Virus record (IMG/VR): IMGVR_UViG_3300036944_001289
Span: 124,001 to 188,000 of that record
DNA: 64,000 nt
Strand: one strand, 5' to 3'
Position numbers and translations under genes: made by a program. Each line of letters begins with the position of its first letter. Position 1 is the first letter of the stretch. The notes beneath the pieces are model-generated. The model did not search any database and was not told the DNA's origin. It worked only from the letters and a program-made list of their open reading frames with translations. Positions 682-62,244 of this stretch are shown here, piece after piece.

Positions 682-708
682 ATTATAAATATATAATACA
701 ATTATCAA
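682..708 (-). promoter_or_regulatory. sigma70-like promoter of uvsY (TTGATA-N15-TATAAT, 5 nt before ATG)
   Basis: Read directly; overlaps the divergent TAAATA element (686-691) of the 708 ORF. Confidence 0.5.
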
Positions 709-917
709 TGATAAGTTTTAAAAAATTCTATGCTATTTTTAAAGAAGATAGCTCTTACTCAGATGGTACATTAGGGCCTGCTGCAAATGTATCTCACAAT
801 GCAATAGCCAATAGCGATTGGTATGCACCTGGTGACTATAGAATACCAAAAGGTGGTAGAGTATATAGACGCAGTGGTGTTGTAAAGCGTAAAAAGAGAC
901 GTAAATACAAAAAATGA
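708..917 (+). CDS. small basic virion-type protein containing a major-capsid-like YAPGDYRIPK motif
   Basis: Start re-called at ATG 708 (the track ORF extends into uvsY antisense); MISFKKFYAIFKE leader and polybasic C-terminus. Confidence 0.65.
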   Translation: MISFKKFYAIFKEDSSYSDGTLGPAANVSHNAIANSDWYAPGDYRIPKGGRVYRRSGVVKRKKRRKYKK

Positions 918-1339
918 TAACAGATTTTGGTCATTGGATTAATTGCACATCATTAAATGTTGAGGAGTTACCCTATGGCTTTATCTATTTGATAGAGAAT
1001 AAAGTAACAAATAAAAAGTATATAGGTAAAAAACAAATTAAAAGTGTAAAAAAGCTTAAACCATTAAAAGGTAAGAAGAATAAAAGGCATTTTGACGTTG
1101 AGACAGATTGGAAGACTTATACATCTTCTTCTAATGAGGTTAATAGTGACATAGAAAAGTACGGAAAAGATAACTTTTCGTTCTCAATTATAAAATTTTG
1201 TGATTCTAAAAGTGAATTAGCATACTTTGAAGCAAAATTACAATTCGAAGAGAACGTACTATTACGTGAGGATTACTATAACGGTATCATAAATTTGAGA
1301 ATAGGTAAAAATTGTTTTATAAAAAAGTTGAAAACATAA
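914..1339 (+). CDS. GIY-YIG family endonuclease
   Basis: GFIYLIEN...KKYIGKK motif, DWKTY.SSS, conserved E and YYN; type common in T4-like phages. Confidence 0.8.
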   Translation: MITDFGHWINCTSLNVEELPYGFIYLIENKVTNKKYIGKKQIKSVKKLKPLKGKKNKRHFDVETDWKTYTSSSNEVNSDIEKYGKDNFSFSIIKFCDSKSELAYFEAKLQFEENVLLREDYYNGIINLRIGKNCFIKKLKT

Positions 1340-1359
1340 AATACAGTATATAATACAGT

Positions 1360-1917
1360 ATGTCTGTTATATACGATGTTGCTGATGATATTAATATAAT
1401 CGACGTTAATTCGATGTTTGTTGAAAAAACCTACGTAGATATAGTTAATGATTTATATAAGCTAGATCTATTGAAACCTAAAATAACTACAGATGTTAAG
1501 CGAATAATGTATCATCATGTAATACATGATATTTGTGAGTTTTATTTATGTAGTCCTCTTAGAAAACCTGTGGTATTATTCAATAATACTCAGTTAGAAG
1601 ACTGTCTAATCTTTCAATACTTTACAGAAGAAGATATATTGGGCATATTAACAAGTGTATTTGCAAAAATACAAAAGACTTTACCTATTAGATGCTACTT
1701 AAGTAAGTATAGTGGCAAGCATCTAAAGTACAAATCTAACTCTGATGATGGTAAAATACTAAATACCTTGAATTTAATAAAGGAAATTAGTAATTCACCT
1801 GTTAAATCTGATATAACATTCGAGAATATTAAAAAATTTACTAAGAAATACGGATTGATATACTTAAATCAAGAATACTTTACCAGGCTTGCAACTAAAC
1901 ATCTTTATATTCGTTAA
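1360..1917 (+). CDS. hypothetical protein
   Basis: 185 aa ORF with TTGAAA-N15-TATAAT promoter at 1328-1354; weak resemblance to a PIN/5'-nuclease N-terminus only. Confidence 0.6.
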   Translation: MSVIYDVADDINIIDVNSMFVEKTYVDIVNDLYKLDLLKPKITTDVKRIMYHHVIHDICEFYLCSPLRKPVVLFNNTQLEDCLIFQYFTEEDILGILTSVFAKIQKTLPIRCYLSKYSGKHLKYKSNSDDGKILNTLNLIKEISNSPVKSDITFENIKKFTKKYGLIYLNQEYFTRLATKHLYIR

Positions 1918-1934
1918 TAAATATAAATATTATT

Positions 1935-2465
1935 ATGAGTATTTTCGATAAAAAAGCTAACCAGATCATTTCATCATTTTTATTAGAAGGTGTAGATTCC
2001 GGATGCACAGTTGTAAAAGTTTCAACACCAACAGGTAAAGTTGATATTAATGCAAAATGTATACAAACGGCTTCAGGTTTATCATACGTGGCTGATGAAG
2101 TTGTTGAAAATATTAATAAAGGTGACGATATTACCGATCTAGTTGTTACCGATGAAGATGAAGAGTTTGATTTTAAGAAAGCTGATCTTGATAAAGACGG
2201 TAAATTATCTTCATATGAAAAAGCACGTGGTGAGGCAGTAGCAGGTGCTAAAGAAGAGAGCGAAGAAGTAGAAGACCCACAACTTAAGAAAATGGGTTTA
2301 GGTAAAGACGCAATTGCCGCTGTAACAGTTGCAGGTAAATTAGCAACAAAAGCAGGCGGGCTTGGTGCTGCAGCACTAACACAAAACAGAATGAATGCTG
2401 CTTACGGTACATTAATGAGAAAAATTGCTAAAAAGGTCACAGATATTTCAAATAAAATACAATGA
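1935..2465 (+). CDS. late protein with EF-hand-like DLDKDGKLSSYE motif
   Basis: TAAATA 5 nt upstream of ATG; leader ending FLLE; DxDxDG loop. Confidence 0.65.
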   Translation: MSIFDKKANQIISSFLLEGVDSGCTVVKVSTPTGKVDINAKCIQTASGLSYVADEVVENINKGDDITDLVVTDEDEEFDFKKADLDKDGKLSSYEKARGEAVAGAKEESEEVEDPQLKKMGLGKDAIAAVTVAGKLATKAGGLGAAALTQNRMNAAYGTLMRKIAKKVTDISNKIQ

Positions 2466-2812
2466 AATTTTTAAGTAAATTAAATTTTTATAAGAATCAG
2501 CTAATTAATGAAGCTGATGAGGAAGCCCCATTACCTCCTAATACTGAAGAGAATCCAACACCTCAAGAAGCTCAACAAACAGAAGAGCAACCAGCTGAAC
2601 CTGAACAACAAACTAAAGAGCTAACACCAGAAGGTGAAGTTCTTTTAATAAGGTTACTTAAGAAAGCATTCGTAATATCACCCAAACCTGAGGATATAGA
2701 GCAGATGTCTGATATTGATAATATCAACGAAAATAATGCAAGAGAATCTCTATCTAAGATAATAGGTTTAATGAAAAAATATTCTACAGATATAGAGTTA
2801 GATATCGATTAA
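2462..2812 (+). CDS. acidic late protein
   Basis: ATGA overlap with previous gene; MKFLSK...LINE leader; E/P-rich linker. Confidence 0.65.
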   Translation: MKFLSKLNFYKNQLINEADEEAPLPPNTEENPTPQEAQQTEEQPAEPEQQTKELTPEGEVLLIRLLKKAFVISPKPEDIEQMSDIDNINENNARESLSKIIGLMKKYSTDIELDID

Positions 2813-9469: not shown

Positions 9470-9473
9470 TTAA

Positions 9474-10479: not shown

Positions 10480-10559
10480 CTATATTTAATGAACCTTAAC
10501 AGATATCAATACTGTAATAAATTTGTTGATTTAAGGAACTTAATTATATAATATAAATT

Positions 10560-11330
10560 ATGAATGATATACTTTCAATATCCGACGATAAAGCATTCTA
10601 TACGCTTGAAGGAGAAGGTCGCTTTGTAGGTCAACCATCAGTTTTCTTGAGGTTGGCAATGTGTAATTTAACGTGTAAAGGGTTTGCATCTGAAGACTCA
10701 CCACACGGTTGTGATTCTTATATCTCTTGGTCAATTAAGAATCGTTTCTCATACGAAGATCTAAACAAATACTTTAGTGATAATGGTTTTGTAGAAAAGT
10801 TAAAAGAAGGTGCAATCTTAAAGTTAACTGGTGGAGAACCATTTCTACAACAGAAAAGACTATATGAATGGGTTGTACAATTCAAGAAGACATTTGGATT
10901 TAGAGAGACCTATCTTGGTGATGAACCTATTCTAAAGATAGACTTTGAAACAAACGGTACTATTTTACCGGATGATAAATGGTCAAGCGTTTTAAACGCT
11001 ACATTTACTACATCACCTAAAATGTCAAATAACGGTGATGAAGAGAAACTAAGATACAAACCAGAAGTACTAAAGTATCTCATTTCAAAAAATGCATGCT
11101 TTAAGTTTGTAATTAACAACCAATCTGATCTAGATGAACTGTATACAAAGTATATCCTCTCTACGGATGTTCTACTACCTAAAGATCTTATCTGGTTAAT
11201 GCCTTGTTGTGGTTCTCGTAAAGAACATGAGTTAAAAGCACCAATGGTTGCAGAGTTATGTAAGGAACATGGATTTAATTTCAGTCCAAGATTGCATTTA
11301 ATTCTTTGGAACCAAGCTTTACGTGTATAA
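10560..11330 (+). CDS. queE: 7-carboxy-7-deazaguanine synthase (radical SAM)
   Basis: YTLEGEG, VFLRL, CNLTC-x11-CDS, TGGEP, ETNGT, SPK, FKFV, PRLH motifs. Confidence 0.9.
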   Translation: MNDILSISDDKAFYTLEGEGRFVGQPSVFLRLAMCNLTCKGFASEDSPHGCDSYISWSIKNRFSYEDLNKYFSDNGFVEKLKEGAILKLTGGEPFLQQKRLYEWVVQFKKTFGFRETYLGDEPILKIDFETNGTILPDDKWSSVLNATFTTSPKMSNNGDEEKLRYKPEVLKYLISKNACFKFVINNQSDLDELYTKYILSTDVLLPKDLIWLMPCCGSRKEHELKAPMVAELCKEHGFNFSPRLHLILWNQALRV

Positions 11331-11363: not shown

Positions 11364-11397
11364 AAAAGAGCTCTATGATTAATCATAGAGCTCTTTT
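11364..11397. terminator. perfect 34-bp palindrome, intrinsic terminator
   Basis: AAAAGAGCTCTATGATT/AATCATAGAGCTCTTTT followed by a T-run. Confidence 0.75.
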
Positions 11398-11414
11398 TTA
11401 TTATAAATATTATT

Positions 11415-11783
11415 ATGAAGTTATCATATATTTTGGGATGTATCAATCAAATAAAGATACATCACTGGTTTACAGGTTCTTATGCTGAACATAAAGCTTT
11501 ACAAAAAGCTTATAATAATTTAGATGAATTATTCGATAGATTAGTGGAAGTGTATTTAGGTAAAAATGGTAAAAGTACTAACGTTGTATCAAATTATGAT
11601 ATTTCTGTAAACGGTTGGTCACCAACAGAACCACTCGATAAATATTATGAAAATATGCGTAATTCTTTAATAACTTATCTTAGAGGTATTTTTAACCCAG
11701 AAGGGGATAAGGATATACTAAATATAATAGATGAGTTAGAGGGTGAATTTAATCAGCTTATTTATCTTTTAAGGTTGAAGTGA
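11415..11783 (+). CDS. ferritin/Dps-like four-helix protein
   Basis: HHW...SYAEHKAL...Y..LDELFDRLVEVYLG and C-terminal DELEGE..QLIYLL. Confidence 0.7.
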   Translation: MKLSYILGCINQIKIHHWFTGSYAEHKALQKAYNNLDELFDRLVEVYLGKNGKSTNVVSNYDISVNGWSPTEPLDKYYENMRNSLITYLRGIFNPEGDKDILNIIDELEGEFNQLIYLLRLK

Positions 11784-27590: not shown

Positions 27591-27598
27591 ATATATTT

Positions 27599-28162
27599 GT
27601 GAAGTTCTCTACATATTACAAATTGGATGAGTCTCTCAAGACTAAACTAAAAGCATTAGGATTAGCAGGTCTAGCTGCTTTAACACCTTACACTAAAGCT
27701 TCAGATATGAGTGTAAATTTTCAGATGCCTGCAACTATCGCACAGTCGCAACGTAATAGGACGGCTTCCAAAACTGCGACAGATATAGATATTGTTGCTG
27801 CTACGTTATATAAGGAAGCTAGAGGTGAAGGTAAGAAAGGTATGGAGGCTGTAAATGAGGTTATACATAATAGATCTAAAAAGAAAAAAAAATCTCTATC
27901 TCAAATATGTACTGAACCTAAGCAATTCTCATGCTGGAATAATATAGCACCTACAAAAGATGTTATAGACTCTATTGCTAAAAAAGATCCAAAAAGTTTT
28001 TCAATAGCTAAGAAAATTGCATCTGATGATTTAACAAACCATACTAAAGGTGCTGAGTATTACCATACACTAGCTGTAAAGCCAACGTGGGGACCAAAAC
28101 TAAAGAAAAGCGGCTACCAAACAGTAATTATAGGTAATCACATTTTTTATTATAAAAAGTAG
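27599..28162 (+). CDS. SleB/Hydrolase_2 cell-wall hydrolase
   Basis: EARGE, VIHNR, QFSCWN, GAEYYH, IGNHIFY; leader MKFSTYYKLDE then a hydrophobic stretch. Confidence 0.9.
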   Translation: MKFSTYYKLDESLKTKLKALGLAGLAALTPYTKASDMSVNFQMPATIAQSQRNRTASKTATDIDIVAATLYKEARGEGKKGMEAVNEVIHNRSKKKKKSLSQICTEPKQFSCWNNIAPTKDVIDSIAKKDPKSFSIAKKIASDDLTNHTKGAEYYHTLAVKPTWGPKLKKSGYQTVIIGNHIFYYKK

Positions 28163-41340: not shown

Positions 41341-41420
41341 CGATAATTATTTATTCCTTTTTTCTTCGACCCCAGGGTTTTTTACCAGGTAACTCAGGAA
41401 AAAATAGCCTAATTCTTCTC

Positions 41421-42275
41421 TTAGTACTTACCTAATTCTTTTAGGTAAGGAGAAATTTGTTGCACGCCTTCTGTGATCACTTCTTCTGTCTGTTCTGTAA
41501 CAACATGATCAACATCTTGGCGCTCATTTAGTGCTTCTTCTTTCAAGACTTCGAGTCTATCTGTTAATTTCTTATTGAAGAGTTTGACTGTGTAATCAAA
41601 ATTTTCATTTATAAATTCCAGCGATTTGCCAGCCATTACTTTCTTAACGTAATATTTTTCTTGATCGTTAAGTTTGGCGGTTTTTTGTTCTAGAATCAAA
41701 CCAGCTTGTATTTGCTGTAGGGATTCTTTTAACATAGCGTTTTCGCTTTGGATAGACTCAAGCTTTTTAGAAGCTTCATTTATTTGGTTTTTACCATCAA
41801 GCACTGCATCTTTGATAGAATCTCTTTCAAGTGCAGATGTGACAGCTAAAGTGTTTCGTAGTGATTCAAGTAGTTTGGCTGCTTTCTTGTTTTTAACAGC
41901 TTCTTGAATGTCAGCAGCAGGTACTATCTCTTCAAGATAAGCTTCGAGATAGTCACTGATAGATTCAACTAAGGTTTGTTTAAACTTCTTAGCATCTTCA
42001 TTTAGTGTTCTCTCATACTTAGAAACAACCTTCTTAAGTTTGTTTGCTCTATCTAGTTCAATAGCTTCTACTACCTTTTCTAATTTAATTGTATGATCTT
42101 TATCAATAGCTTCGAGTAGTTGCTCGAGCTTCTTAGTATAAAGTTCATCTTGTTCAGCAAGAGCTTTCTCAACATGGAGTTCAACTTTTGCTTTTACCTT
42201 TGATTCAATAGCCTCTTGAATCATTTTTAAAGATTCAGGTGAGAGGTCTTTTAATTGTTCGTTAATATTCTCCAT
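41421..42275 (-). CDS. prohead core scaffold gp22
   Basis: Acidic coiled coil between gp21 and gp23, multiple (L/I)xE sites. Confidence 0.85.
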   Translation of the reverse strand: MENINEQLKDLSPESLKMIQEAIESKVKAKVELHVEKALAEQDELYTKKLEQLLEAIDKDHTIKLEKVVEAIELDRANKLKKVVSKYERTLNEDAKKFKQTLVESISDYLEAYLEEIVPAADIQEAVKNKKAAKLLESLRNTLAVTSALERDSIKDAVLDGKNQINEASKKLESIQSENAMLKESLQQIQAGLILEQKTAKLNDQEKYYVKKVMAGKSLEFINENFDYTVKLFNKKLTDRLEVLKEEALNERQDVDHVVTEQTEEVITEGVQQISPYLKELGKY

Positions 42276-42278
42276 AAA

Positions 42279-42473
42279 TTAGAAAAGTTTTGCGTTATTA
42301 TTATTTATTATTTTTTGCTTTATTTTTTGTTCAATGGCAACTTTTATTGAGTCTTTAGCAGATTTAGGCTTATTACTCAATATATTGTCAATAAAATTAT
42401 GCAAGGACTCTTTAACTACAGAACGCTTACTGTGTTTTTTTACCTTTTCTTTTATCTTATGTTTTTTTCTCAT
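42279..42473 (-). CDS. small basic head-module protein
   Basis: 64 aa between gp21 and gp22. Confidence 0.5.
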   Translation of the reverse strand: MRKKHKIKEKVKKHSKRSVVKESLHNFIDNILSNKPKSAKDSIKVAIEQKIKQKIINNNNAKLF

Positions 42474-42474
42474 A

Positions 42475-43137
42475 TTATAATTTATTTATAAAACTAAGAA
42501 TCGCGCTACGTAGATATTGATCTTTATCGGAGCGAGGTAAAGTTATTAACTTCTTTTCAAAAGTATCATATAATTCTTCATAATGTCCATTCTCTCTCAA
42601 TACATATTGTTTAGATTCGAGAATACCATTAACAAACGCTTTACCGAAACTTGGATCTGCAACGCAATCGATTGCTACTAGTCTAAAATCTTTTACTCTA
42701 TTACAACCGTTTGATTCAGGTATTAATTGCCCTAAAGCTCTAGAACTCATACCAACTTTAACACCGTCGTTAATAAGTGAGCGAACTATAAGACCTGTAG
42801 GTGTTGATAGTACTTTACTTTTACCGTAAAATACATTACCATCTCTTTTTAGTTCTGTAACTAAGTGACAGACTCTAGATAGATCTACGTCAGCTGTGGT
42901 AGGGTGATTAAGTTCACCCATTGCTCTACCAGGCTTAATCATATCATCTTCGTAGCGCTGAACTTCACGGACCATTTCATCGATAGGATATAGACGCTTA
43001 TTTCTATTGACACCCTCTGCCATCATATATGGCCCCTTTATATAGAGTGTTCTAGGTTCATTAGCATTACGCTCTTCAACGATATAAGAAAAATCGTTGT
43101 TATTAGTAGGTGTCTCAACTATTAGTCTAAAACTCAT
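42475..43137 (-). CDS. prohead protease gp21
   Basis: NRNKRLYP, GELNHP, GMSSRALG, DCVADPS. Confidence 0.95.
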   Translation of the reverse strand: MSFRLIVETPTNNNDFSYIVEERNANEPRTLYIKGPYMMAEGVNRNKRLYPIDEMVREVQRYEDDMIKPGRAMGELNHPTTADVDLSRVCHLVTELKRDGNVFYGKSKVLSTPTGLIVRSLINDGVKVGMSSRALGQLIPESNGCNRVKDFRLVAIDCVADPSFGKAFVNGILESKQYVLRENGHYEELYDTFEKKLITLPRSDKDQYLRSAILSFINKL

Positions 43138-43171
43138 TTAATATTATTTATATGATGGTGTATCATATCCA

Positions 43172-43621
43172 TTAAGTTTTTATATTTAATTCTTTTTCTG
43201 TTAGTATAATAAACTCCATATTCTTTCTTTTAGCCCATTCTTTAGCTGCTATCCATTTTGCTTGATTGGTAATCCAGGTAGTTTGTTCGTATAGTATTGT
43301 TTTTTTATGTTTACCTTTTGTAGGTACTGGTTGTACCGTTTGTTTGCTAGGCTTAATTTCTATCAAAAGTTTTTGTTTATTACCGTCTTTATCTTTAAAG
43401 ACAACAAAATTATCTACAAAATATCTGTGAACTTTCTGATCTAAAGGGTTGATATATGGTACAATTATATTTTCACTACCCCATGCTAATATATTAGGAT
43501 TTGTATCAGCCCATCTAAAGAATTTTAACTCCCAACCACTACGATATACAGGATTGTTCTTTCCTAGATATTTTTCTATATTAATCGGTCGGTAAATTCC
43601 TTGCTTATATTTATTGGCCAT
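43172..43621 (-). CDS. head completion nuclease gp4
   Basis: YRSGWE, WGSE, HRYFVD, IEIKP, KW.AAKEW. Confidence 0.95.
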   Translation of the reverse strand: MANKYKQGIYRPINIEKYLGKNNPVYRSGWELKFFRWADTNPNILAWGSENIIVPYINPLDQKVHRYFVDNFVVFKDKDGNKQKLLIEIKPSKQTVQPVPTKGKHKKTILYEQTTWITNQAKWIAAKEWAKRKNMEFIILTEKELNIKT

Positions 43622-43650
43622 AAATTAACTATTTAAAAAGTTAAATGTTT

Positions 43651-44496
43651 TCATTTTACAAACACACCACTATACATCATTGCATTACCCCATTTACTCG
43701 GATATAAAGACACATGTACATGTTTGAGACCATGGCTAATCAAATTAGCAGTAGTGTAGTTAGCATTTTTAACTTGTAGTAGGTTGTTCTTAATATTTTT
43801 ACCTATGTTTATGTTAAACTCATCTATATATGCGTCTTCCGGTAACTCATAGAAATTAGCATCATCTGGTTCAGTAGTGTTTATTGTATCACTCTCATCA
43901 TACTTAGACCTATTAATTCTGGTATCTATATAAGACTTAGATCTAATTAGATTAGTGAATGTAACATGAATAAATCCATTAGGTGTAAGATTATTGAATA
44001 CATGTGCTATCGCATCTATAGCCTCTGGTATTGCTGTAGTAGTAGTATCATAATCGACTATATCGAATAATATTGGTTTGTCTACAATATTATTATCAAC
44101 AACATTGATGAATTTTTGCGGTTGTTGTAATACATTTTCAAACTTAACAATTTTTCTTTTTGTAAAAGGCACATACACACTTAATTTATTATTAGATGCA
44201 TCTCTAATAAATCTTCGACCTTGTTCAAAAGCTTTAGTAGGGGTATAATCGACACCATATATCTCTATGGTTGGATTAGGTAGATTTGATATTATTTTAC
44301 GTTCAAAATCATAGGTATCTGGGAGAGATGCTATTCTAACCACTGGCTGTGCATTTAATTTATCAAACACCCCAAGTCTAGATAATATAGATATATAATT
44401 TTCTCTATCTTTAAGTTTGTTCTCGATAGAGAACCCAGTATGATACTCCTCTCTACGTTTACGTTCAATTAAAAAATAGTCCTTAAATGTTATCAT
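43651..44496 (-). CDS. SAM-methyltransferase-like protein with capsid-targeting leader
   Basis: MITFKDYFLIE; RIASLP, EIYGVD, FDIVDYD, LTPNGFIHVTF in Rossmann MTase strand order. Confidence 0.45.
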   Translation of the reverse strand: MITFKDYFLIERKRREEYHTGFSIENKLKDRENYISILSRLGVFDKLNAQPVVRIASLPDTYDFERKIISNLPNPTIEIYGVDYTPTKAFEQGRRFIRDASNNKLSVYVPFTKRKIVKFENVLQQPQKFINVVDNNIVDKPILFDIVDYDTTTTAIPEAIDAIAHVFNNLTPNGFIHVTFTNLIRSKSYIDTRINRSKYDESDTINTTEPDDANFYELPEDAYIDEFNINIGKNIKNNLLQVKNANYTTANLISHGLKHVHVSLYPSKWGNAMMYSGVFVK

Positions 44497-44517
44497 TATT
44501 ATTATGTGACCTAGTCC

Positions 44518-45666
44518 CTAGCCGACAAAGAATAGAGGAGGTTCATTATCACCAAGCCCGGGTGTAGCACCGGTATATAGTTGCTCTTCGAGTTTTTCCT
44601 TCTCAGCAAGACCTTCCGATAACATGTCTGCATTTACAGATCCACCACCGAATAATGTAGTACCTTGGTACTTACCACGCACTCTTGCAAGTACTATTTT
44701 TGTTAATGCAAGAGAATATTGATATACCCACTGCTCTTGTATTACATCTCTTAAAGGCTTTTCAACATAACAGCTTATAACACCATAATATTGTGAAGTG
44801 CTTTCACCAGCTTTTGGTTGAGGATATATTCTCATTAACTGAGTTCTTTCATTAAAGTCGTATGAAGGTTTAATTGCCAGTAACTTCTCTCTATTGTTTA
44901 ACCAGTCCTTTAATACATACCAGCTTATTAAATCAAAGCCGTAATTACCCATCGCATAACTGAAATAGGTTTGTTGTGCTAATGTTTGTTCAATTGTAAA
45001 CAGCGTATTAATACCTGTTGTAGATCCTTGTTCAAAGTCTGTAATAGCGATTACTTTACGATAATCCATTACGTCATAATCAAAAGAGTTATTATATTTT
45101 GTAGATGATACTGGTGTACCTAATTGTGTTATCTGTCTTTGAGATGTTTGTGTAAAATTAGCTGATAGAGATGAATTAAAAGCAGTAATTTGACTATATA
45201 TTGTTGTATCAAATATTTCATTTACAAATAGACCACCACTTAGTGCTGCAGATAAACTTGTAGATGTATTAAAGTAACCTGAATTTGTTGCTGTATTTAC
45301 TACGTATGCAACAGTTTGCTGTGGTACGTAATTTGTATATTGAGGGTTAGAAGTTTTACCTTTTGTCTGATCTAACACACTTGCATCGTTTAATGTTACT
45401 AAAGAGTCTAGTCTAATACCAACATCTTTCTCATAAAGGTTACTATTGAATAATATATACTCTCTGGTATAACCGGCAAATTTAGTAAACATTTCACAAG
45501 CTATGCTAATATTTTCATATAACTGGTCTCTATGAACCTCTACATTTATAAATGGGTAACCAAGGCTTCTAAGAATTCTTTCTGATAATCTATTAAAAGA
45601 AGTTATCTTGTTTGAAAGATTAGTACTTTGAAAAGCAGAGATGGGTGTTATATCGCACTGTGACAT
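44518..45666 (-). CDS. neck protein gp13
   Basis: RSLGYPFINVE, WVYQYSLAL.K..L, KYQGTTLFGG, PPLFFVG. Confidence 0.85.
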   Translation of the reverse strand: MSQCDITPISAFQSTNLSNKITSFNRLSERILRSLGYPFINVEVHRDQLYENISIACEMFTKFAGYTREYILFNSNLYEKDVGIRLDSLVTLNDASVLDQTKGKTSNPQYTNYVPQQTVAYVVNTATNSGYFNTSTSLSAALSGGLFVNEIFDTTIYSQITAFNSSLSANFTQTSQRQITQLGTPVSSTKYNNSFDYDVMDYRKVIAITDFEQGSTTGINTLFTIEQTLAQQTYFSYAMGNYGFDLISWYVLKDWLNNREKLLAIKPSYDFNERTQLMRIYPQPKAGESTSQYYGVISCYVEKPLRDVIQEQWVYQYSLALTKIVLARVRGKYQGTTLFGGGSVNADMLSEGLAEKEKLEEQLYTGATPGLGDNEPPLFFVG

Positions 45667-45705
45667 ATAGTTATTTATTAAGAGTCTATGATGTCAATGT
45701 TTTCG

Positions 45706-47475
45706 TTATTGTGGTGCGGGTGTTTCAGCTGGTGCTGCTTCTGCACCACCAGTTTCAACTGGAGCTTCTCCACCTACTTCAGCGGGACCTCCACCAAACT
45801 CCGGTGGTGAACCTGCTGGTGATTGTTGCTCACCCGCACCACCTATTTCACTACCTGCTGCTGCTTGATTTTGTTGACTCATTGTCTGTAGTTGATCTCT
45901 CCAATTTGGACCAGCATTTGTAATATTATTAAGCTCCCACTCAAGCTCTTTATCCTTACGGAGGAATTCACGATTTGCCTTAATGTCAATATCACTCCAA
46001 CCAAGAATTTTCTTTTGTAAATATGTAGGAGAGATAGTAGGATTGCTCGCAAGGGTATTAAAGTTATTTGTTTTAAGTTCTAATTTTTGGCTCTCTCTTA
46101 ACTCATAAAAGTTAGTAGGTACATTAAATTCTAATGATATATGCTGTTCTTTAATGTCGTATTTTTCTACTAGACCTTTAAGATTTAAGTGTGTTAAAAA
46201 TCCATTTTTTAATGCACCTGCAAATTGTTGTTGTAAGCGAATAATAAACTTAGCAAACTTGAGCTCTTCTCTTAAAATTTCTGCACCATCTTTGAAAGTA
46301 CTCTCAGAGTTAAGTCTATTAGTAGGTACTTTTAATGATTTGTAAAGTTTGTTTACAAAGTACATTAAGTCTGTTAGCTCACCAAGATTTGCACCACCAG
46401 CTAATTGTGTAACAGATGTGCCTTCGCTACCTTGTCTTTTTGCAAACCAAAAAGAGTCCAACATTGATTGTGGATTAAATTTCTGAACTATACCAGATTG
46501 ATTGACGTCGAAAGTCTTCTTGCTCCAGTACTCTTGAATTAATTTACGTAAATAAGCTTCAGCTTTTGGTGGTGGCATGTTACCAACATCAACATTAAAT
46601 ACTAGACGTTCAGGAGCTCTTACCAATCTATATATTACTATAGAGTCTTCTATAAGAGATAACTGTCTGTAAGCTCTTCTTGAATTTTCAATAAACGGTA
46701 ATCTAAAAGATTTATCTTGATTCCATATGCCAGAATTAATATATGTAACCTGGTTTTTATCCATAGGGATAAACTCATACTTAATTACTTTATTAGGCTT
46801 AGCAGGATCAAAAATAGGCTTTCTTAGAATATAACCTTTAATAATCATATTCTGAATATTATCAAAAATAGGATCGATTAACTCCGTAGGCAACTGTACC
46901 ACGCCAAGTATACCTTCTTCTGGAAACTTTTTATGAACTACATGTTCAAAGTAAACTTCACCCTCCACTATTAACTGTCTAAAATATTCCCAGCCTTTTC
47001 TTTCAAGATTAAAATATTCTACGTATTTTTGAAACTCTTTAATTATCTGTTCCTTATCTATATCTTTTAAGTCAATATTTTTAAATTGTAACTTAACAAT
47101 ATCACCTGCTTGATCTTTATTGATTGTTTCATCACAAATCTCATCTAAACAATCAGATATTTCAGAGAATGCCGCCATCACTCTGTAATCCATTATTCTC
47201 GCACCCTTATCAGCCTGTATATTGGCATATACCATATCATTGTATATGCCACCTTTTGCTATAGAACCAGATGGTGTGTTATTATAATCATTATCAAAAA
47301 ATACGCTATTACGAGCTAAAGCTTCGGAACGTTTAGACCCTGTGTCCTGGAATATTTGATACTTAGGATTTATCTGATTTAAGTATCCATTTAGATCAAG
47401 AGTTTGGTATGGTAACTTATTTACAAGGTTTTTAAAGAAACCACCGGATACTGTATTTTTATCGTCTGCAGCCAT
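45706..47475 (-). CDS. portal protein gp20
   Basis: RQLSLIEDSIVIYRLVRAPERLVFNVDVGNMPPPKAEAY, GEILREELKFAKFI.RLQ. Confidence 0.97.
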   Translation of the reverse strand: MAADDKNTVSGGFFKNLVNKLPYQTLDLNGYLNQINPKYQIFQDTGSKRSEALARNSVFFDNDYNNTPSGSIAKGGIYNDMVYANIQADKGARIMDYRVMAAFSEISDCLDEICDETINKDQAGDIVKLQFKNIDLKDIDKEQIIKEFQKYVEYFNLERKGWEYFRQLIVEGEVYFEHVVHKKFPEEGILGVVQLPTELIDPIFDNIQNMIIKGYILRKPIFDPAKPNKVIKYEFIPMDKNQVTYINSGIWNQDKSFRLPFIENSRRAYRQLSLIEDSIVIYRLVRAPERLVFNVDVGNMPPPKAEAYLRKLIQEYWSKKTFDVNQSGIVQKFNPQSMLDSFWFAKRQGSEGTSVTQLAGGANLGELTDLMYFVNKLYKSLKVPTNRLNSESTFKDGAEILREELKFAKFIIRLQQQFAGALKNGFLTHLNLKGLVEKYDIKEQHISLEFNVPTNFYELRESQKLELKTNNFNTLASNPTISPTYLQKKILGWSDIDIKANREFLRKDKELEWELNNITNAGPNWRDQLQTMSQQNQAAAGSEIGGAGEQQSPAGSPPEFGGGPAEVGGEAPVETGGAEAAPAETPAPQ

Positions 47476-47539
47476 TTTAAATATTTAATATAAAAAATAG
47501 ATTTATCAATTATAATAAATCTATAGATTTTAATTTATA

Positions 47540-49792
47540 TTAAGTATATAAACCACCCGTTGCTGCTACACCAAGAGCATTACCAAGTAAATAATTACTG
47601 GCACCACCATTTGTATAAATTAATGAATTATTCCATACATTATAATATTTACCTGAATAAACAGCGACACCAGAAAAGGTAGGTCTAGTTCCAAATGTTG
47701 GTGTAAGGTTAATTGTAGCAAGGTTACGTGCAACAGCAAAAGCATCTGTTAATGTCAAATTACCAGCACCATAAGCCAAATTAGACCCTGGATTAACACG
47801 TATATATCCATTGTTTTCAGCTAACATATGTGCATAAATTTGCGAACCACTTACGACACTTATATTCCAACTAGCATTTACCCATATTTCACCACCTTCT
47901 GTAGCATACAGATGAATTAACGCAGAATTACTACCTATAAACGTTATACCTGTACCTATTAACAATCTTGCTGTAGATCTTGCACAAGATGCAAATGTAA
48001 CTAATAAGTTTGATATACTTACCTGACCTCTACCTATACGAAATGGATTAGTATTATTTCCTAGTGTAACTGTACCGACACCAATACCACTTAGTGTCGT
48101 TAAATTAACATTCGTTGGTCCAAGAAGAAGATTACTAGATATTTCATATGTACCTGGTTTTAATAATATTGTTGGTGATACTGATGTTTGTATAGCTAAA
48201 CCACCAATGTAGTCAAATGCTTTTTGAACAGTTAAAAAAGGATTATCATCAGTACCGGTACCTGATAAATTACTACCTGTAGTTGAAACGTATAGTGTAA
48301 AATTAGTATCTATAGCGTTAGCTGTATTGACAGTTACATCTATATTTTGAGAACCAGCATCGGTAGCAGATATAGTTGTACCAACAAAATTAATACCAGT
48401 AACACCTACAACAACGGTAGTACCTTCATCCTTTATTGTTAACGATGATACAGCAAGGTTAGGATTAAAACTACTTAGAGTATTTAATACTATTTTCTCT
48501 GCAGATGTTATTAAACCTTTTGTTGAGGTAGTAGCTAGATCAAGCATCGAAGTTACTTGTGTAGGTGTTAAATCCTCAACATTACCGGTACCTGCTGTTA
48601 TTCTACCTTTAATGACATTAGTTGATACTTGCGATAATTTAGTATTACCAATTACACCGCTATCAACAGTCCAAGATGTACCGCTACCTGATACAGTTAT
48701 ATCACCTTTATCACCGTCAGTAAGACTGCCTGAAACACTTACTGTAATATTACCTGGTGAAGATAATGATGATTGAACACTTGCACCAATAAAATTAATA
48801 GATGATACAGATGTGGATATAGTAATACCTTCATCTTTTACGGTTAAAGATGGTGAGATGATATTGGGGTTGAAACTACTTAGAGTATTTAATACTATTT
48901 TCTCTGCAGATGTTATTAAACCTTTTGAAGACGTAGTAGCTAGATCAAGCATTAAAGTTGCTTGTGTAGTCGTTAAGTCTTCTAGATTACCTGTACCTGC
49001 TGTTGTTCTACCTTTAAAAACACCTGAAGATACTTGTGATAATTTAGCGTTACTAACTACATTAGAATCAATTGTCCAAGATGTACCTGAGCCAGATACA
49101 GTTATATCACCTTTATCGCCATCGGTAATTGCTCCAGAAACACTTACTATAATATTACTCGGTGATGATAATGATGATTGAACGCTTGCACCAATAAAGT
49201 TAATCGATGTTACAGAAGTTGATACAGTAGTACCTTCATCCTTTATTGTTAACGATGATACAGCAAGGTTAGGATTGAAACTACTTAGAGTATTTAATAC
49301 TATTTTCTCTGCAGATGTTATTAAACCTTTTGTGGAGGTAGTGGCTAAATCAAGCATTGAAGTTATCTGTGCTGTAGTTAGGTCTTGTACATCGCCCATA
49401 CCAGTTGATATTCTACCTTTAATAGTATTAGCAGATATAGTAGCTAATTTTGTATTTGTTACTGCATTAGAATCAATAGTCCAGGTAGCTCCTGAACTAG
49501 ACACGGTTATATCGCCTTTATCACCATCTGTAATTGATCCAGAAACACTTACAGTTATATTACCAGGAGAAGAGATAGATGCTTGTACTGTAGCTCCGAC
49601 AAAATTAATTGATGATACAGTAGTTGAAACTGTTGTACCTTCGTCTTTTATAGTTAAAACTTGTGGTATAGAAGACTTTATATCTGAAAATGTAATTTTA
49701 TTAACAACACCATCTGTGGTAGATATAGGAATAATATCACTATCACTTGGAGTTGTAATAGAAGATAAATCAATAAACTGTTTGTATTTCAT
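47540..49792 (-). CDS. long tail-fibre-like protein with three 135-aa repeats
   Basis: Repeated TIKDEG...ITDGDKGDITVS...LDLATT..KGL; C-terminal YVSTTG...PF.TVQKA beta-helix-type domain. Confidence 0.75.
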   Translation of the reverse strand: MKYKQFIDLSSITTPSDSDIIPISTTDGVVNKITFSDIKSSIPQVLTIKDEGTTVSTTVSSINFVGATVQASISSPGNITVSVSGSITDGDKGDITVSSSGATWTIDSNAVTNTKLATISANTIKGRISTGMGDVQDLTTAQITSMLDLATTSTKGLITSAEKIVLNTLSSFNPNLAVSSLTIKDEGTTVSTSVTSINFIGASVQSSLSSPSNIIVSVSGAITDGDKGDITVSGSGTSWTIDSNVVSNAKLSQVSSGVFKGRTTAGTGNLEDLTTTQATLMLDLATTSSKGLITSAEKIVLNTLSSFNPNIISPSLTVKDEGITISTSVSSINFIGASVQSSLSSPGNITVSVSGSLTDGDKGDITVSGSGTSWTVDSGVIGNTKLSQVSTNVIKGRITAGTGNVEDLTPTQVTSMLDLATTSTKGLITSAEKIVLNTLSSFNPNLAVSSLTIKDEGTTVVVGVTGINFVGTTISATDAGSQNIDVTVNTANAIDTNFTLYVSTTGSNLSGTGTDDNPFLTVQKAFDYIGGLAIQTSVSPTILLKPGTYEISSNLLLGPTNVNLTTLSGIGVGTVTLGNNTNPFRIGRGQVSISNLLVTFASCARSTARLLIGTGITFIGSNSALIHLYATEGGEIWVNASWNISVVSGSQIYAHMLAENNGYIRVNPGSNLAYGAGNLTLTDAFAVARNLATINLTPTFGTRPTFSGVAVYSGKYYNVWNNSLIYTNGGASNYLLGNALGVAATGGLYT
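48468..49332 (-). repeat. 405-bp period tandem repeat inside the fibre gene
   Basis: Identical ~55-bp block at 48468, 48873 and 49278. Confidence 0.9.
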
Positions 49793-49801
49793 TGTTATTA
49801 T

Positions 49802-50335
49802 TTATATAAGATAAATAGCGCTTGTGCTATCTACAAAAACATTATTATCGTTATCTACACATATGCTTAATAAAGACTCTGGCGTTAGGAATAACGATCT
49901 ACCATCTGGTCTTCTATATGTAAAAGATGATACGGGTCTAATATAGGTTATTATTAATGGTGTTGTTACAGATATTACAGTACTATTTGAAGATAAATAT
50001 GGTGAAAATAACGTTTTAGAGCTCTCTGAGTACCCAGCAACATTATATGGTATGAATTGTATATCACAATCACCTATTAATCTAGGTACATTTATTAAAA
50101 TATTATTTTTGTCTATAACAGTATAATCAACTAAAGAACCTGTAATAGGCTGCTGTCTTTTGAATATGTTTATACTAGTTAGTGATGGTAAAGAAAATGT
50201 ATCGTTACTCGATAACATAACATTTAAAAGCTTATCAAAATTATATCCCTGTAAACCTACAACACTTAAATTATTTGTGTTTGTGGTTAACGTATCGTAT
50301 AATTTTATACCATCGACTGTAATGCTGGTTATCAT
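49802..50335 (-). CDS. structural protein downstream of gp15
   Basis: Start re-called at ATG 50335 (ATGA overlap with gp15 stop); Ig-like T/S/N-rich sequence. Confidence 0.55.
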   Translation of the reverse strand: MITSITVDGIKLYDTLTTNTNNLSVVGLQGYNFDKLLNVMLSSNDTFSLPSLTSINIFKRQQPITGSLVDYTVIDKNNILINVPRLIGDCDIQFIPYNVAGYSESSKTLFSPYLSSNSTVISVTTPLIITYIRPVSSFTYRRPDGRSLFLTPESLLSICVDNDNNVFVDSTSAIYLI

Positions 50336-60318: not shown

Positions 60319-60681
60319 TTAGTCAATGCTGGGTTCTGAATCTTCGTCATCCGAATCCATATCTTCATCTTCTACATCCTCCACCATATCATTCTTCTTA
60401 ACCTTACCTGCCGCAATCAAACGACGCGCTTCCTTTTGCGCCTCCTTAAACTCTTCATACTTAGCCTTGCGACGAGCCTCCTTTTCCTCAGCCTCAATCT
60501 TATTCTTAGCTTCCGCTGCCAATTCCATCTCTTCCATATGCTGAATGGCCGCATCCAAAATTGCGGTCATCGTATCTTTTTCCGTCAAGTTAAGCTTCTT
60601 GCGGATTTCGATAATGCGATTCTTATCGGCTTCATGGAGTAGAGCTGCGGTGAACTTGGCTGGCACTTTTAGGGTCTTCAT
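60319..60681 (-). CDS. RHH-like DNA-binding protein with coiled coil and acidic tail
   Basis: beta-strand then two helices (KFTAALLHEADKNRIIEIRKKLNLTEKDTMTAILDAAI); visibly higher GC than the bulk genome. Confidence 0.5.
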   Translation of the reverse strand: MKTLKVPAKFTAALLHEADKNRIIEIRKKLNLTEKDTMTAILDAAIQHMEEMELAAEAKNKIEAEEKEARRKAKYEEFKEAQKEARRLIAAGKVKKNDMVEDVEDEDMDSDDEDSEPSID

Positions 60682-61196
60682 TTTAGTAGTTAGTTTGTTG
60701 TTGTTGTTAATAAGGGCTCTATCGGCCCTACATTTATATTACTAAAGTTCCGTTGTAAGAGTTGAAGGAGGATCCGAGGAAAAATAAGTCCTAAGCTTTT
60801 CAGAAAAGTAAAAAATGCAAGCCGCACTTTTCTGAAAAAATAGAATACACCTTTCATACCTGACTTTTCTGAAAAGCTTTGAATGCTGCTTCCAATTCGT
60901 AAACCACTTTTCGAGGAACTTTGATATTATAAAGTTTAAGGGTCTATATTTTTCCTGTATACTATTTCAGTTCCTGCGTTTCGTACGCATTAAAATGCAA
61001 GGCTTTATATGATACTAATATAAAAGAAGCTTACAAGTACGCAGGAACAAGTACTTGTGCCTAGTAAGCAGGAACTGGAACAGAGTACTATATAGCCGTA
61101 CTAAGAATCGGAACAATAAGAAAGGAGAGCCGCATAAAGCAGACTCTCCTTGTTCCTATATACTAGCTAACTAAAACTGTTCCTAGATACTATTGA

Positions 61197-61379
61197 TTAC
61201 TTACTAATCTTATCATCGACCTTATTTGAGAAGTATAGCATGATATAACCGAATACTGCCATCTTAATGATTACTAGTACTTGCATTACTAGAGTAGTTT
61301 GTTGCTTGAATGTAGCTCCTTCTAAGATAGCCAGTATTAGAAAGAATAGTGTTAGTAGTAGATTGATAGCTGTACGCAT
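61197..61379 (-). CDS. small two-TM membrane protein
   Basis: Two hydrophobic helices in 60 aa. Confidence 0.5.
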   Translation of the reverse strand: MRTAINLLLTLFFLILAILEGATFKQQTTLVMQVLVIIKMAVFGYIMLYFSNKVDDKISK

Positions 61380-61439
61380 ATAGTATGATCTAATATGTAT
61401 ATGAGGTTCTTATATCCAAGAATAACAATGTGTTTCGGG

Positions 61440-61469
61440 GCTCTCAGAGCGCTGTTTGTCTCTGAGAGC
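61440..61469. other. GC-rich hairpin without U-tract
   Basis: GCTCTCAGAG-N10-CTCTGAGAGC. Confidence 0.6.
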
Positions 61470-61510
61470 TGGGCGGGGCTATGATATCAGTGAGTGGGTT
61501 CTGTGAATGG

Positions 61511-62047
61511 TTAACTCATCTCGTCTAACCAGTTTTTGTAATAGGCTCTACCAGCTTTTGCTGCATTTGGACCACCTATAAATAGTGTTAACCCACCTGA
61601 ACCTACTACGAAACGTGGACCTCCACTTTGTTTATACAAAATCTCAGTGCAAGCCAAAATTGTAAGCTTACCACTAGCAATTGAATTAAAGAATGATAAT
61701 GGATCATCCACGAGTGTGATGTCTTTTGTTTTGAATACTCCTTTAGCAATAGCATCTTCGATAGTTAATTTAGCCTCGTCTGCATCTGGACCTGGTTTAC
61801 CAGTGTCGACGAATTCATAAGGCATATGTAGCATAAGGTCTTCAAACCCATAATTAGTGTAGATGTCTGAATTATTATCTTCTGGTAAAATTATAAAACA
61901 GGTTGGATCATCACCAAGACTATCATAGTTATCTTCGCACCTTACTACCGCGTTAGCTACTTTTGTTCCGTAGTCCTCGTCGGTGTTCTCTTTATAGATA
62001 GAAGCATAAGCTTCTGAAATTAACTTATAATCATGTTTGTCTTTCAT
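61511..62047 (-). CDS. acidic late protein
   Basis: TAAATA 5 nt upstream; KLISEAY...YKE leader. Confidence 0.65.
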   Translation of the reverse strand: MKDKHDYKLISEAYASIYKENTDEDYGTKVANAVVRCEDNYDSLGDDPTCFIILPEDNNSDIYTNYGFEDLMLHMPYEFVDTGKPGPDADEAKLTIEDAIAKGVFKTKDITLVDDPLSFFNSIASGKLTILACTEILYKQSGGPRFVVGSGGLTLFIGGPNAAKAGRAYYKNWLDEMS

Positions 62048-62244
62048 AGGTATATTTATTTATTCAGCGCTGCTCATAGATTTGAGAATCTTAGCTTGGG
62101 CTTCGAATTCTCTCTTGAAGCAGCATTATTTTTGTTTATATTTTGTTAGCATTCTGACATTTCTATGATCTCCCATACCTCTCTTGTAAATCCCTCTCCC
62201 ATCCTCCTATAACCTTCCGGTGCCGCATTAGGTTTTTCGTTAAT

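What the first reader, a model, noticed from the sequence alone, without database searches (positions are those of the whole stretch)
682..62060. Widespread leaderless gene architecture for both late and sigma70-type promoters
Seen: TAAATA lies exactly 5 nt before the start codon at 1935, 4066, 4077, 4652, 6939, 9474, 11415, 11803, 12716, 27599, 28391, 35728, 38102, 45666, 51506, 52029, 55021, 58554, 59186 and 62047 (6-9 nt at several others). TTGAHH-N15/16-TATAAT lies 5-7 nt before ATG at 676, 1360, 10560, 14461, 28415 and 35782. SD motifs are absent at these starts. Known: T4 late promoters are TATAAATA with initiation a few nt downstream. Inference: many mRNAs start at or next to the AUG, which constrains the host ribosome type and host range.
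Basis: partly seen in the sequence, partly recalled or inferred. Interest (0 to 1): 0.6.

Follow-up and report, generated by a model that had tools for sequence, protein, structure and literature searches.

The report
Promoters abutting start codons, T4-like phage
In this 209-kb T4-like phage and its many uncultured relatives, promoter boxes sit 5-9 bases before the start codons and ribosome-binding (Shine-Dalgarno) sites are missing, so many messages probably begin at or next to the AUG; this is predicted from sequence only, with no RNA data.

Summary
Genome-wide, TAAATA lies exactly 5 nt before 40-42 of 305 gene starts, where about 1 is expected. All six listed TTGA-N15/16-TATAAT-N5-7-ATG sites are present. 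Shine-Dalgarno motifs are at chance level across the whole genome.

The window belongs to a complete 209,282-bp T4-like phage from a shale-gas metagenome.

- **Late sigma factor.** It encodes a gp55-type factor next to gp47/gp46 homologues.
- **Geometry.** T4's late box TATAAATA spans -13 to -6, so TAAATA-N5-ATG puts +1 on the A of ATG.
- **Gene class.** TAAATA genes are head, tail and lysis genes (8 of 9). None of 25 replication or nucleotide-metabolism genes carries it; their operon heads carry TTGA/TATAAT or a third class, GGAAC-N4-5-TAnAAT.
- **Terminators.** Five TAAATA boxes directly abut an upstream terminator.
- **Other genes.** Most genes without a box overlap, or lie within 4 nt of, the preceding gene.
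- **Relatives.** The pattern recurs in 80 related contigs and a 217-kb relative. It is weaker in Pelagibacter phage HTVC008M and absent from T4 and cyanophages.

The leaderless reading is well supported in silico but untested: no RNA data exist. The host-ribosome and host-range inference is weak, and the host is unknown.

The parts
1924..1937 (+). Late-type box TAAATA-N5-ATG (gene 1935-2465). Representative of 11 plus-strand gap-5 sites: starts 1935, 4652 (GTG), 6939, 9474, 11415, 11803, 12716, 27599 (GTG), 38102, 52029, 55021. Also 4077, an internal ATG of ORF 3903-4451.
45664..45677 (-). Late-type box TAAATA-N5-ATG (head-tail adaptor gene 44518-45666). Representative of 7 minus-strand gap-5 sites: starts 28391, 35728, 45666, 51506, 58554, 59186, 62047.
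39886..49804 (-). Head and tail module. TAAATA lies 5-9 nt before MCP (41340, gap 7), a small ORF (42473, gap 9), the prohead protease (43137, gap 7), head closure (43621, gap 8), adaptor (45666, gap 5), portal (47475, gap 6) and a tail protein (49792, gap 6). The scaffold gene (42275) has no box and starts 3 nt after the upstream stop.
   Evidence: orthologue footprint
27588..28162 (+). Endolysin gene with TAAATA-N5-GTG. The TAA of the box is the stop codon of the upstream helicase gene.
11380..11417 (+). Terminator hairpin and T-run running straight into TAAATA-N5-ATG (gene 11415-11783). The same arrangement occurs at 51504-51545 (minus strand, gene 51114-51506).
1328..1362 (+). Sigma70-type TTGAAA-N15-TATAAT-N5-ATG. 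Others of this class: 674-708 (-) UvsY-like, 8803-8839 (+) QueD, 14428-14463 (+) glycosyltransferase operon, 28381-28417 (+), 28740-28776 (+) ahead of the RNR genes, 35749-35784 (+), 37120-37156 (+) QueF.
10526..10562 (+). QueE promoter carrying both TTGA (-35) and GGAAC upstream of TATAAT-N7-ATG. A second GGAAC-class site lies at 63398-63422 (-).
28381..28417 (.). Back-to-back divergent promoters. The minus-strand TAAATA box (28397-28402) lies inside the spacer of the plus-strand TTGA/TATAAT promoter. Similar pairs occur at 14428-14463 and 35726-35784.
41341..41420 (-). Exception: an 80-nt conserved, structured intergenic element upstream of the MCP gene, followed by a GGA-containing A-rich stretch and then TAAATA-N7-ATG.

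Best explanation
The window is part of a complete T4-like phage genome in which promoters are built directly onto start codons.

Three promoter classes share one geometry, with a -10-type box ending 5-9 nt (mode 5-6) before the ATG or GTG:
1. A late class, consensus aATAAATAwTnnT-ATG, with no -35 element. I infer that the phage's gp55-type late sigma factor reads it on host core RNA polymerase.
2. A sigma70-type class, (G)TTGA-N~16-TAtAAT-N5-7-ATG, at the heads of replication, nucleotide and DNA-modification operons.
3. A GGAAC-N4-5-TAnAAT-N5-7-ATG class in the small-ORF, probably early, regions.

By T4 and sigma70 geometry, transcription would start on the A (or G) of the start codon or 1-4 nt before it. 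That would give leaderless or near-leaderless mRNAs translated from a 5'-terminal AUG without a Shine-Dalgarno pairing. Downstream cistrons, which overlap or nearly touch the preceding stop codon, would be translated by termination-reinitiation coupling.

Shown here: the motifs, their spacing, their statistics, their class-function association, the gp55 homologue, the absence of SD, and conservation in relatives. Inferred: which polymerase form reads each class, the exact start sites, and the mode of translation.
For: - Spacing peak.
- Late-class profile: A at -12 and -13, A/T-rich -5..-1, T at -1 in 35 of 49 sites (pyrimidine -1 / purine +1), and no -35 signal.
- Start codons at gap 5: ATG 49, GTG 7, TTG 1, consistent with purine-initiated transcripts.
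- T4 late box position -13..-6, and A(-13) variants: PMC2988020.
- gp55 homologue at G000:122373-122822(-): E = 5.7e-10 to T4 gp55 and phrog_234 E = 7.7e-28. It sits next to SbcD/SbcC (gp47/gp46) homologues as in T4. It is the only sigma region-2-like sequence in the genome, and there is no region 4.
- Function split: TAAATA on 8 of 9 annotated head, tail and lysis genes and on 0 of 25 replication, nucleotide or auxiliary genes, Fisher p = 5e-7.
- Upstream elements: 27 of 36 start-adjacent TAnAAT carry TTGA or GGAAC, p = 1.7e-15 and 1.9e-10.
- GGAAC ends 15-20 nt before 21 starts, against 0.12 expected per position.
- Five terminators end 10-14 nt before the ATG, with only the TAAATA box in between.
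- 115 of 192 box-less genes overlap or lie within 4 nt of the upstream gene.
- No SD, with T4 as a positive control.
- Relatives: a gap-5 peak of 139 in 80 contigs. The 217-kb relative G001 has 33 genes at gap 5 and TTGA at gap 30 in 25 genes.
- Orthologous portal and protease genes keep TAAATA 5-9 nt from the ATG while the flanks diverge.
- TAAATA is the second rarest of the 15 A4T2 hexamers inside coding sequence, on both strands (weak evidence).
Against: - There is no RNA evidence of any kind. The only runs holding the sequence are DNA.
- gp33 and gp45 homologues were not detected by sequence.
- About 290 further TAAATA hexamers lie inside genes, so the hexamer alone cannot define a promoter.
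- Many box-bearing genes sit 1-20 nt after the previous gene. In 7 cases the TAA of the box is that gene's stop codon, so read-through polycistronic transcripts must also exist. In those transcripts the box would be an internal A-rich pre-start sequence.
- The A positions in the box (-6, -12, -13) coincide with adenines that promote SD-independent initiation in Flavobacterium johnsoniae (PMC6847099).
- In most relatives the MCP gene has no TAAATA near the ATG. It has a structured leader with AAGGA(G/A) instead. The scaffold gene of many relatives has the box 21-23 nt upstream. The rule is therefore not universal.
- Gene calls are crude.
Confidence: 0.7

Rival explanations
1. The boxes are not promoters but an SD-independent translation-initiation signal: an A/T-rich 'Kozak-like' pre-start region suited to a host whose ribosomes ignore SD (Bacteroidia-type). 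Transcripts would be ordinary leadered polycistrons made from promoters elsewhere.
For: - SD is absent genome-wide and G is depleted upstream of all starts.
- A is enriched at -6, -8, -10, -12 and -13 in all genes and in relatives. A-3, A-6, A-12 and A-13 stimulate initiation in F. johnsoniae (PMC6847099).
- Many boxes lie in tight operon junctions.
Against: - The invariant T's at -11 and -7 and an exact hexamer at one offset point to sequence-specific protein recognition.
- The hexamer equals the core of the T4 late box, and a gp55 homologue is present.
- The strict late versus early/middle gene split is not expected of a general translation signal.
- Start-adjacent TAnAAT co-occurs with TTGA at -35 or with GGAAC.
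- Terminators abut the box.
- No Bacteroidetes -7 promoter motif (TAnnTTTG) is enriched, and F. johnsoniae mRNAs are leadered.
- HTVC008M has the same arrangement alongside normal SD use.
Confidence: 0.1
2. The boxes are real promoters, but leaderless transcripts are a minor product. Most protein would come from long read-through transcripts, with translational coupling and A-rich unstructured junctions doing the work. The fixed distance would mainly reflect genome compaction, with promoters squeezed into the only non-coding bases available.
For: - The genome is 91% coding.
- Intergenic gaps of 1-20 nt are common at box-bearing genes, and 7 boxes reuse the upstream stop codon.
- 60% of box-less genes are coupled.
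- T4 itself makes overlapping late transcripts (general knowledge of T4).
Against: - The gap-5 peak is just as sharp where intergenic space is ample (30 to over 100 nt in 35 late-class genes), so compaction does not force it.
- Terminator-box-ATG junctions imply that fresh initiation is needed there.
- Conservation of the 5-9 nt distance across divergent orthologues.
Confidence: 0.15
3. The pattern is a chance by-product of a 32% G+C genome, or of TAA stop codons lying just upstream of the next gene.
For: The genome is AT-rich. In 7 gap-5 cases the TAA of the box is the upstream stop codon.
Against: - 40-fold enrichment at a single offset, and no peak for control hexamers or at internal ATGs.
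- The pattern-reversed control gives far fewer matches: 1-5 in G001 and G003 against 25-38 observed, though 13 against 27 in G002.
- Stop-codon overlap explains fewer than 15% of cases.
- T4, S-SSM4, S-PM2, P-SSM2 and RM378 lack the peak.
Confidence: 0.01

Closest known systems
Bacteriophage T4 late transcription (gp55 late sigma factor, TATAAATA box at -13..-6, no -35 element)
   Same: The box core is the same (TAAATA, usually preceded by A). A(-13) variants are also known in T4. The segment downstream is AT-rich and there is no -35 conservation. A gp55 homologue lies in gp55-gp47-gp46 synteny. The boxes sit in front of head, tail and lysis genes.
   Different: In T4 the late boxes are not locked to the start codon, and late mRNAs carry SD leaders. 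T4 shows no TAAATA-N5-ATG enrichment (10 against 5 in the control) and has a clear SD signal. Here the box-to-ATG distance is fixed at 5-9 nt and SD is absent. gp33 and gp45 homologues were not found by sequence.
Thermus phage phiYS40 (most middle and late mRNAs leaderless) and the '-10 region adjacent to ORF' pattern of Deinococcus-Thermus
   Same: A -10-type element lies a few bp upstream of the ORF and gives leaderless mRNA as a major expression mode, including in a large myovirus (PMC3594737; PMC12340547).
   Different: The phage lineage and host phylum differ. Those promoters are host sigma-A -10 elements. Here the main class is a T4-type late box, presumably read by a phage sigma factor, and the leaderless state is only inferred.
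Pelagibacter phage HTVC008M (cultured T4-like phage)
   Same: TAAATA lies exactly 5 nt before 11 of 192 predicted gene starts. These include the annotated starts of head closure, the baseplate tail-tube cap, the DNA end protector and the tape-measure-like gene.
   Different: Only about 6% of genes are affected, and about half of its genes carry SD-like motifs with a G peak at -11..-8. I found no description of this feature in the searched literature.
Bacteroidia-type SD-independent initiation (Flavobacterium johnsoniae)
   Same: Genome-wide lack of SD and A-rich pre-start regions.
   Different: F. johnsoniae transcripts are leadered (mean 33 nt) and use a TAnnTTTG -7 promoter (PMC6847099). Here that motif is not enriched, and the promoters are TTGA/TATAAT-type or T4-late-type, placed on the start codon.

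Membership tests
T4-type late promoter / gp55 system | TATAAATA-like box with no conserved -35 element and an AT-rich segment just downstream | tested here: met
   TAAATA preceded by A at -12 (31 of 49) and by A (29) or T (11) at -13. No information content around -35. Positions -5, -4 and -1 are over 80% A/T. T4 criteria taken from PMC2988020.
T4-type late promoter / gp55 system | Phage-encoded gp55-family late sigma factor | tested here: met
   (E = 5.7e-10, 44% identity over T4 gp55 residues 46-118). (phrog_234 'late sigma transcription factor', E = 7.7e-28). (weak Sigma70_r2 hit at the same place). (no region 4).
T4-type late promoter / gp55 system | gp33 co-activator and gp45 sliding clamp | tested here: inconclusive
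   There was no hit with T4 gp45, cyanophage gp45 or Pfam DNA_PPF. gp33 was not searched. These proteins are small and divergent, so a blank is weak evidence.
T4-type late promoter / gp55 system | Located in front of late (virion, lysis) genes | tested here: met
   8 of 9 late-type genes against 0 of 25 early/middle-type genes, p = 5e-7.
T4-type late promoter / gp55 system | Transcription initiates about 6 nt downstream of the box, dependent on gp55 | not testable with these tools
   No RNA runs hold the sequence.
Leaderless genes (bacterial type) | -10 promoter element at a fixed short distance (about 5-8 nt) from the start codon, and no SD | tested here: met
   113 of 305 genes carry one of the three box types 4-9 nt before the start.
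Leaderless genes (bacterial type) | mRNA 5' end at, or within a few nt of, the AUG | not testable with these tools
   This needs dRNA-seq or 5'-RACE. No RNA data are available.
Sigma70-type promoter | -35 TTGAnn, a spacer of about 15-17 nt, and -10 TAtAAT | tested here: met
   (GTTGA at gap 30: 9 observed against 0.3 expected). In relative G001, TTGA lies at gap 30 in 25 genes.
Bacteroidia-type expression signals | TAnnTTTG -7 promoter element and leadered, SD-less mRNAs | tested here: not met
   TAnnTTTG shows no positional peak upstream of starts. The SD-less part is met.

The most novel reading that the evidence does not exclude
A whole, widespread clade of 160-230 kb T4-like phages (at least 600 IMG/VR contigs with MCP 70-82% identical) may have abandoned Shine-Dalgarno-led initiation altogether. 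It would run its program on leaderless first cistrons plus stop/start reinitiation. This might let the phage shut off or outcompete SD-dependent host translation, as phiYS40 is thought to do through IF2 and IF3 levels. The capsid gene would be the deliberate exception, controlled by a conserved structured leader.
Probability: 0.2. Interest if true: 0.8.

Novelty: new variant of a known kind. Interest (0 to 1): 0.58.

Why it matters
If confirmed, T4-type late transcription would be directly coupled to leaderless translation in an abundant, uncultured aquatic phage clade. That would be a second, independent case after Thermus phage phiYS40 of a large phage relying on leaderless mRNA.

There are practical consequences.
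- Gene callers that expect SD motifs mis-place starts in these genomes. At least 15 starts in this genome are better set by the box.
- The box-to-ATG rule gives a cheap annotation aid and a temporal-class predictor.
- The absence of SD narrows, but does not identify, the host's translation habits.
- HTVC008M, which is cultured, offers an immediate experimental test of the geometry.

Tried and rejected
- **RNA evidence.** The one run search found only DNA runs (shale-gas and freshwater metagenomes). Read laying was therefore not used; contigs of DNA runs cannot show RNA 5' ends.
- **Close cultured relatives.** None were found. Megablast gave no hit, and the best MCP identity in the phage collection is 34%, to cyanophages.
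- **Host identification.** MCP relatives in genome bins carry mixed, implausible labels (Bacteriovoracaceae, Terrimicrobiaceae, 'Proteobacteria', 'archaeon'), most likely from mis-binning. I draw no host from them.
- **Bacteroidia host.** Considered because SD is absent. It is not supported by promoter type or by the SD-like box of the MCP gene.
- **Phage factors that might bias translation.** No bS21, MazF/PemK or IF3 C-domain was found. Blanks only.
- **gp45 clamp.** Not found.
- **Rfam.** No family matches in the window, nor at the MCP leader here or in L059.
- **RNAalifold.** It gave no structure on the gappy MAFFT alignment of the MCP leader. The hairpins were seen by eye and by a simple script.
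- **Stop-codon artefact and chance.** Both rejected (see the rival explanations).
- **Literature.** Searches for leaderless T4-like late genes or cyanophage leaderless transcripts returned nothing relevant. phiYS40's primary paper is not held, so a review is cited instead.

Full report
**What the window is.** The window is G000:C1:124001-188000 of a 209,282-bp virus record with direct terminal repeats, rated complete. G+C is 32%. The sequence occurs in shale-gas metagenome DNA runs. A crude ORF and codon-usage caller gives 305 genes covering 91% of the genome. There are 27 tRNA genes, all outside the window.

The major capsid protein (window 39886-41340, minus strand) is a gp23 homologue, at best 34% identical to cyanomyovirus MCPs. 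The portal, prohead protease, head closure, adaptor, tail sheath, DNA polymerase, UvsX/UvsY, gp41-type helicase, primase and SbcC/SbcD homologues are all T4-like. This is a distant T4-like jumbo phage with no cultured close relative in the phage collection.

**The observation.** All listed sites exist. '4066' is the motif coordinate belonging to the 4077 start, not a separate start.

- Genome-wide, TAAATA sits exactly 5 nt before 40-42 first start codons. Gaps 6-9 hold 10, 5, 4 and 7, and other gaps hold 0-3. Only 5-6 of 776 internal in-frame ATGs have it.
- Position-specific 5-mer counts give TAAAT at gap 6 in 51 genes against 1.1 expected (p = 6e-68).
- 49 of 51 TAAATA-N5-ATG sites open an ORF of at least 40 aa.
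- Control hexamers show no peak.
- The aligned sites give the consensus aATAAATAwTnnT-ATG, with T at -1 in 35 of 49 and nothing conserved around -35.
- Start codons at gap 5 are ATG 49, GTG 7 and TTG 1 (ORFs of at least 40 aa).

**Shine-Dalgarno signal.** There is none anywhere in the genome. SD tetramers occur at 18 of 305 genes against 17 expected, and G is depleted from -15 to -1. The same test on a T4 segment detects SD (9 of 23, with a G peak at -11..-8).

**Is TAAATA a promoter?** Five lines of evidence say yes.

1. *Geometry.* The T4 late box TATAAATA spans -13 to -6, with A(-13) variants and an AT-rich segment downstream (PMC2988020). TAAATA therefore spans -11..-6, and a 5-nt gap places +1 on the A of ATG. 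T at -1 and a purine at +1 fit normal initiation preferences (established knowledge).
2. *The factor.* A gp55 homologue lies just outside the window at G000:122373-122822(-). It matches T4 gp55 (E = 5.7e-10) and phrog_234 (E = 7.7e-28). It sits next to gp47/gp46 homologues, as in T4 and cyanophages. It is the only sigma region-2-like sequence in the genome, and no region 4 is present.
3. *Gene class.* Eight of nine annotated late-type genes carry the box: MCP, protease, head closure, adaptor, portal, tail protein, tail sheath and endolysin. None of 25 annotated replication, nucleotide or auxiliary genes does (Fisher p = 5e-7). Two homing-endonuclease-like genes also carry it.
4. *Terminators.* Five box-bearing genes have a hairpin and T-run ending 10-14 nt before the ATG, with only the box in between. 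Examples are window 11415 and 51506. A promoter for these genes has nowhere else to be unless the terminator is read through.
5. *Phylogenetic footprint.* Upstream of portal and protease orthologues (59-80% protein identity), TAAATA stays 5-9 nt from the ATG while the flanking sequence diverges.

**The other two classes.**

- *Sigma70-type.* TTGA-N16-19-TAnAAT composites occur 57 times in the genome, and 18 of them end 5-8 nt before a gene start. GTTGA at gap 30 is seen 9 times against 0.3 expected.
GGAAC ends 15-20 nt before 21 gene starts against 0.12 expected per position. Most are in small-ORF regions at 183-207 kb and 10-50 kb.
- *Upstream elements.* Of 36 TAnAAT hexamers lying 4-9 nt before a start, 17 have TTGA at the -35 position and 10 have GGAAC. 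Elsewhere the figures are 40 and 16 of 1312 (p = 1.7e-15 and 1.9e-10).
- *Genes served.* In the window these promoters head the UvsY-like gene, QueD, QueE, a glycosyltransferase operon, the operon leading to the RNR genes, and QueF. The gp55 gene itself, just outside the window, also has one.

Three different upstream specificity elements share one box-to-ATG geometry. That is hard to reconcile with a pure translation signal.

**The remaining genes.** With strict patterns, 113 of 305 genes carry a box 4-9 nt before the start. Of the other 192, 94 overlap the upstream gene and 21 start within 0-4 nt of its stop. Several more have degenerate boxes. The picture is leaderless first cistrons followed by stop/start-coupled cistrons, with no SD needed.

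**Relatives and comparators.**

- At least 600 IMG/VR contigs encode an MCP 70-82% identical. In the 80 fetched (831 kb, G+C 30-45%), the gap-5 peak is 139 against a background of about 3, and SD is again absent apart from the MCP gene.
- The complete 217-kb relative G001 reproduces the late class (33 at gap 5, 14 at gap 6) and an even sharper sigma70 class (TTGA at gap 30 in 25 genes). It lacks the GGAAC class.
- Pattern counts against a reversed control: G001 38/5, G002 27/13, G003 25/2, G004 15/2. T4 10/5, S-SSM4 1/1, S-PM2 5/3, P-SSM2 6/6, RM378 0/1.
- Pelagibacter phage HTVC008M is intermediate. It has 11 of 192 genes at gap 5, including annotated starts of late structural genes, while about half its genes keep SD-like motifs.

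The arrangement is therefore a lineage trait, carried to an extreme in this clade. It is compatible with a phage whose other genes use SD.

**Exceptions and limits.**

- In 79 of 80 relatives the MCP gene has no TAAATA near the ATG. The scaffold-MCP spacer instead holds a conserved element: CUG, a covarying hairpin (AGGN...NCCU), GA, a second variable hairpin, then (G)GGUCGA. About 10-25 nt later comes AAGGA(G/A), then the ATG. It has no Rfam match.
- The window's MCP gene has this element and also TAAATA-N7-ATG.
- The scaffold gene of many relatives has the box 21-23 nt upstream.
- About 290 TAAATA hexamers lie inside genes. The hexamer is the second rarest of its 15 composition-matched permutations on both strands, which is weak evidence of avoidance.
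- No transcript 5' end has been observed. The host is unknown, and gp33 and gp45 were not found.

**Verdict.**

It rests on sequence logic only.
- The corollary about host ribosome type and host range is not established.
- The nearest precedents are T4 late transcription for the promoter, and phiYS40 and Deinococcus-Thermus for leaderless architecture (PMC3594737, PMC12340547).
- I found no description of this combination in T4-like phages. I rate it a new variant of a known kind.

Noticed in passing
window 10535-10562 (+), 63398-63422 (-); outside the window, about 20 more sites at G000 10-50 kb and 183-207 kb, minus strand: A third promoter-like class, GGAAC-N4-5-TAnAAT-N5-7-ATG. GGAAC ends 15-20 nt before 21 gene starts against 0.12 expected per position. 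Most sites precede small ORFs in presumably early regions. The class is absent from the 217-kb relative G001. What recognises GGAAC so close to the -10 box is unknown.
   Followed up: partly
window 41341-41420 (-), and the same spacer in L011-L090: A conserved structured element lies between the scaffold and MCP genes. It reads CUG, a covarying hairpin (AGGN..NCCU; variants AGGC/GCCT, AGGGC/GCCCT, AGGTC/GACCT, AGAAT/ATTCT), GA, a variable second hairpin, an invariant GGUCGA, and then an AAGGA(G/A) SD-like box before the ATG. It has no Rfam match. It is a candidate cis-regulatory RNA, processing site or ribozyme.
   Followed up: partly
NC_020484 (L115-L123), e.g. gene starts 6280, 7562, 11972, 18943, 19456, 16007(-), 18916(-): The cultured Pelagibacter phage HTVC008M has TAAATA exactly 5 nt before 11 of 192 predicted gene starts. 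These include late structural genes (head closure, baseplate tail-tube cap, DNA end protector). It has this although about half of its genes carry SD-like motifs.
   Followed up: partly
window 8837-11330, 37154-38074; G000:110536-111288: QueD, QueE, QueF and QueC homologues are present. This is a 7-deazaguanine pathway, suggesting a modified DNA base.
   Followed up: no
window 14461-24420 (+): A run of about 12 co-oriented genes contains at least five glycosyltransferases (GT2, GT47-like, GT1/GT4 types). Only one sigma70-type promoter was detected, at its head, and most junctions are overlapping or short. Nucleotide-sugar epimerases lie elsewhere in the genome.
   Followed up: no
window 4077, 4652, 35782, 52029; 11 more genes genome-wide (list): The longest-ORF start is probably wrong. 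An in-frame ATG or GTG a few codons downstream carries the box at the canonical distance, so the motif can be used to correct start annotation.
   Followed up: partly
window 28381-28417, 14428-14463, 35726-35784: Divergent gene pairs share one 35-60 nt spacer. The minus-strand TAAATA box lies inside or beside the spacer of the plus-strand TTGA/TATAAT promoter. These are overlapping late and early/middle promoters on opposite strands.
   Followed up: no
G000:117113-117982 (-), G000:94565-95587 (+): Two homing-endonuclease-like (HNH / DNA-binding) genes carry TAAATA-N5 boxes.
   Followed up: no
G000:37492-44944 and 195708-198864, minus strand: There are 27 tRNA genes in two clusters, including a tRNA-Ile with anticodon TAT as called by ARAGORN.
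   Followed up: no
L092 (CAYOWH010000002.1, 118,691-bp contig): A GTDB 'Bacteriovoracaceae' MAG contains a 119-kb contig encoding an MCP 70% identical to this phage's. It is probably a phage contig binned into, or mistaken for, a bacterial genome.
   Followed up: no
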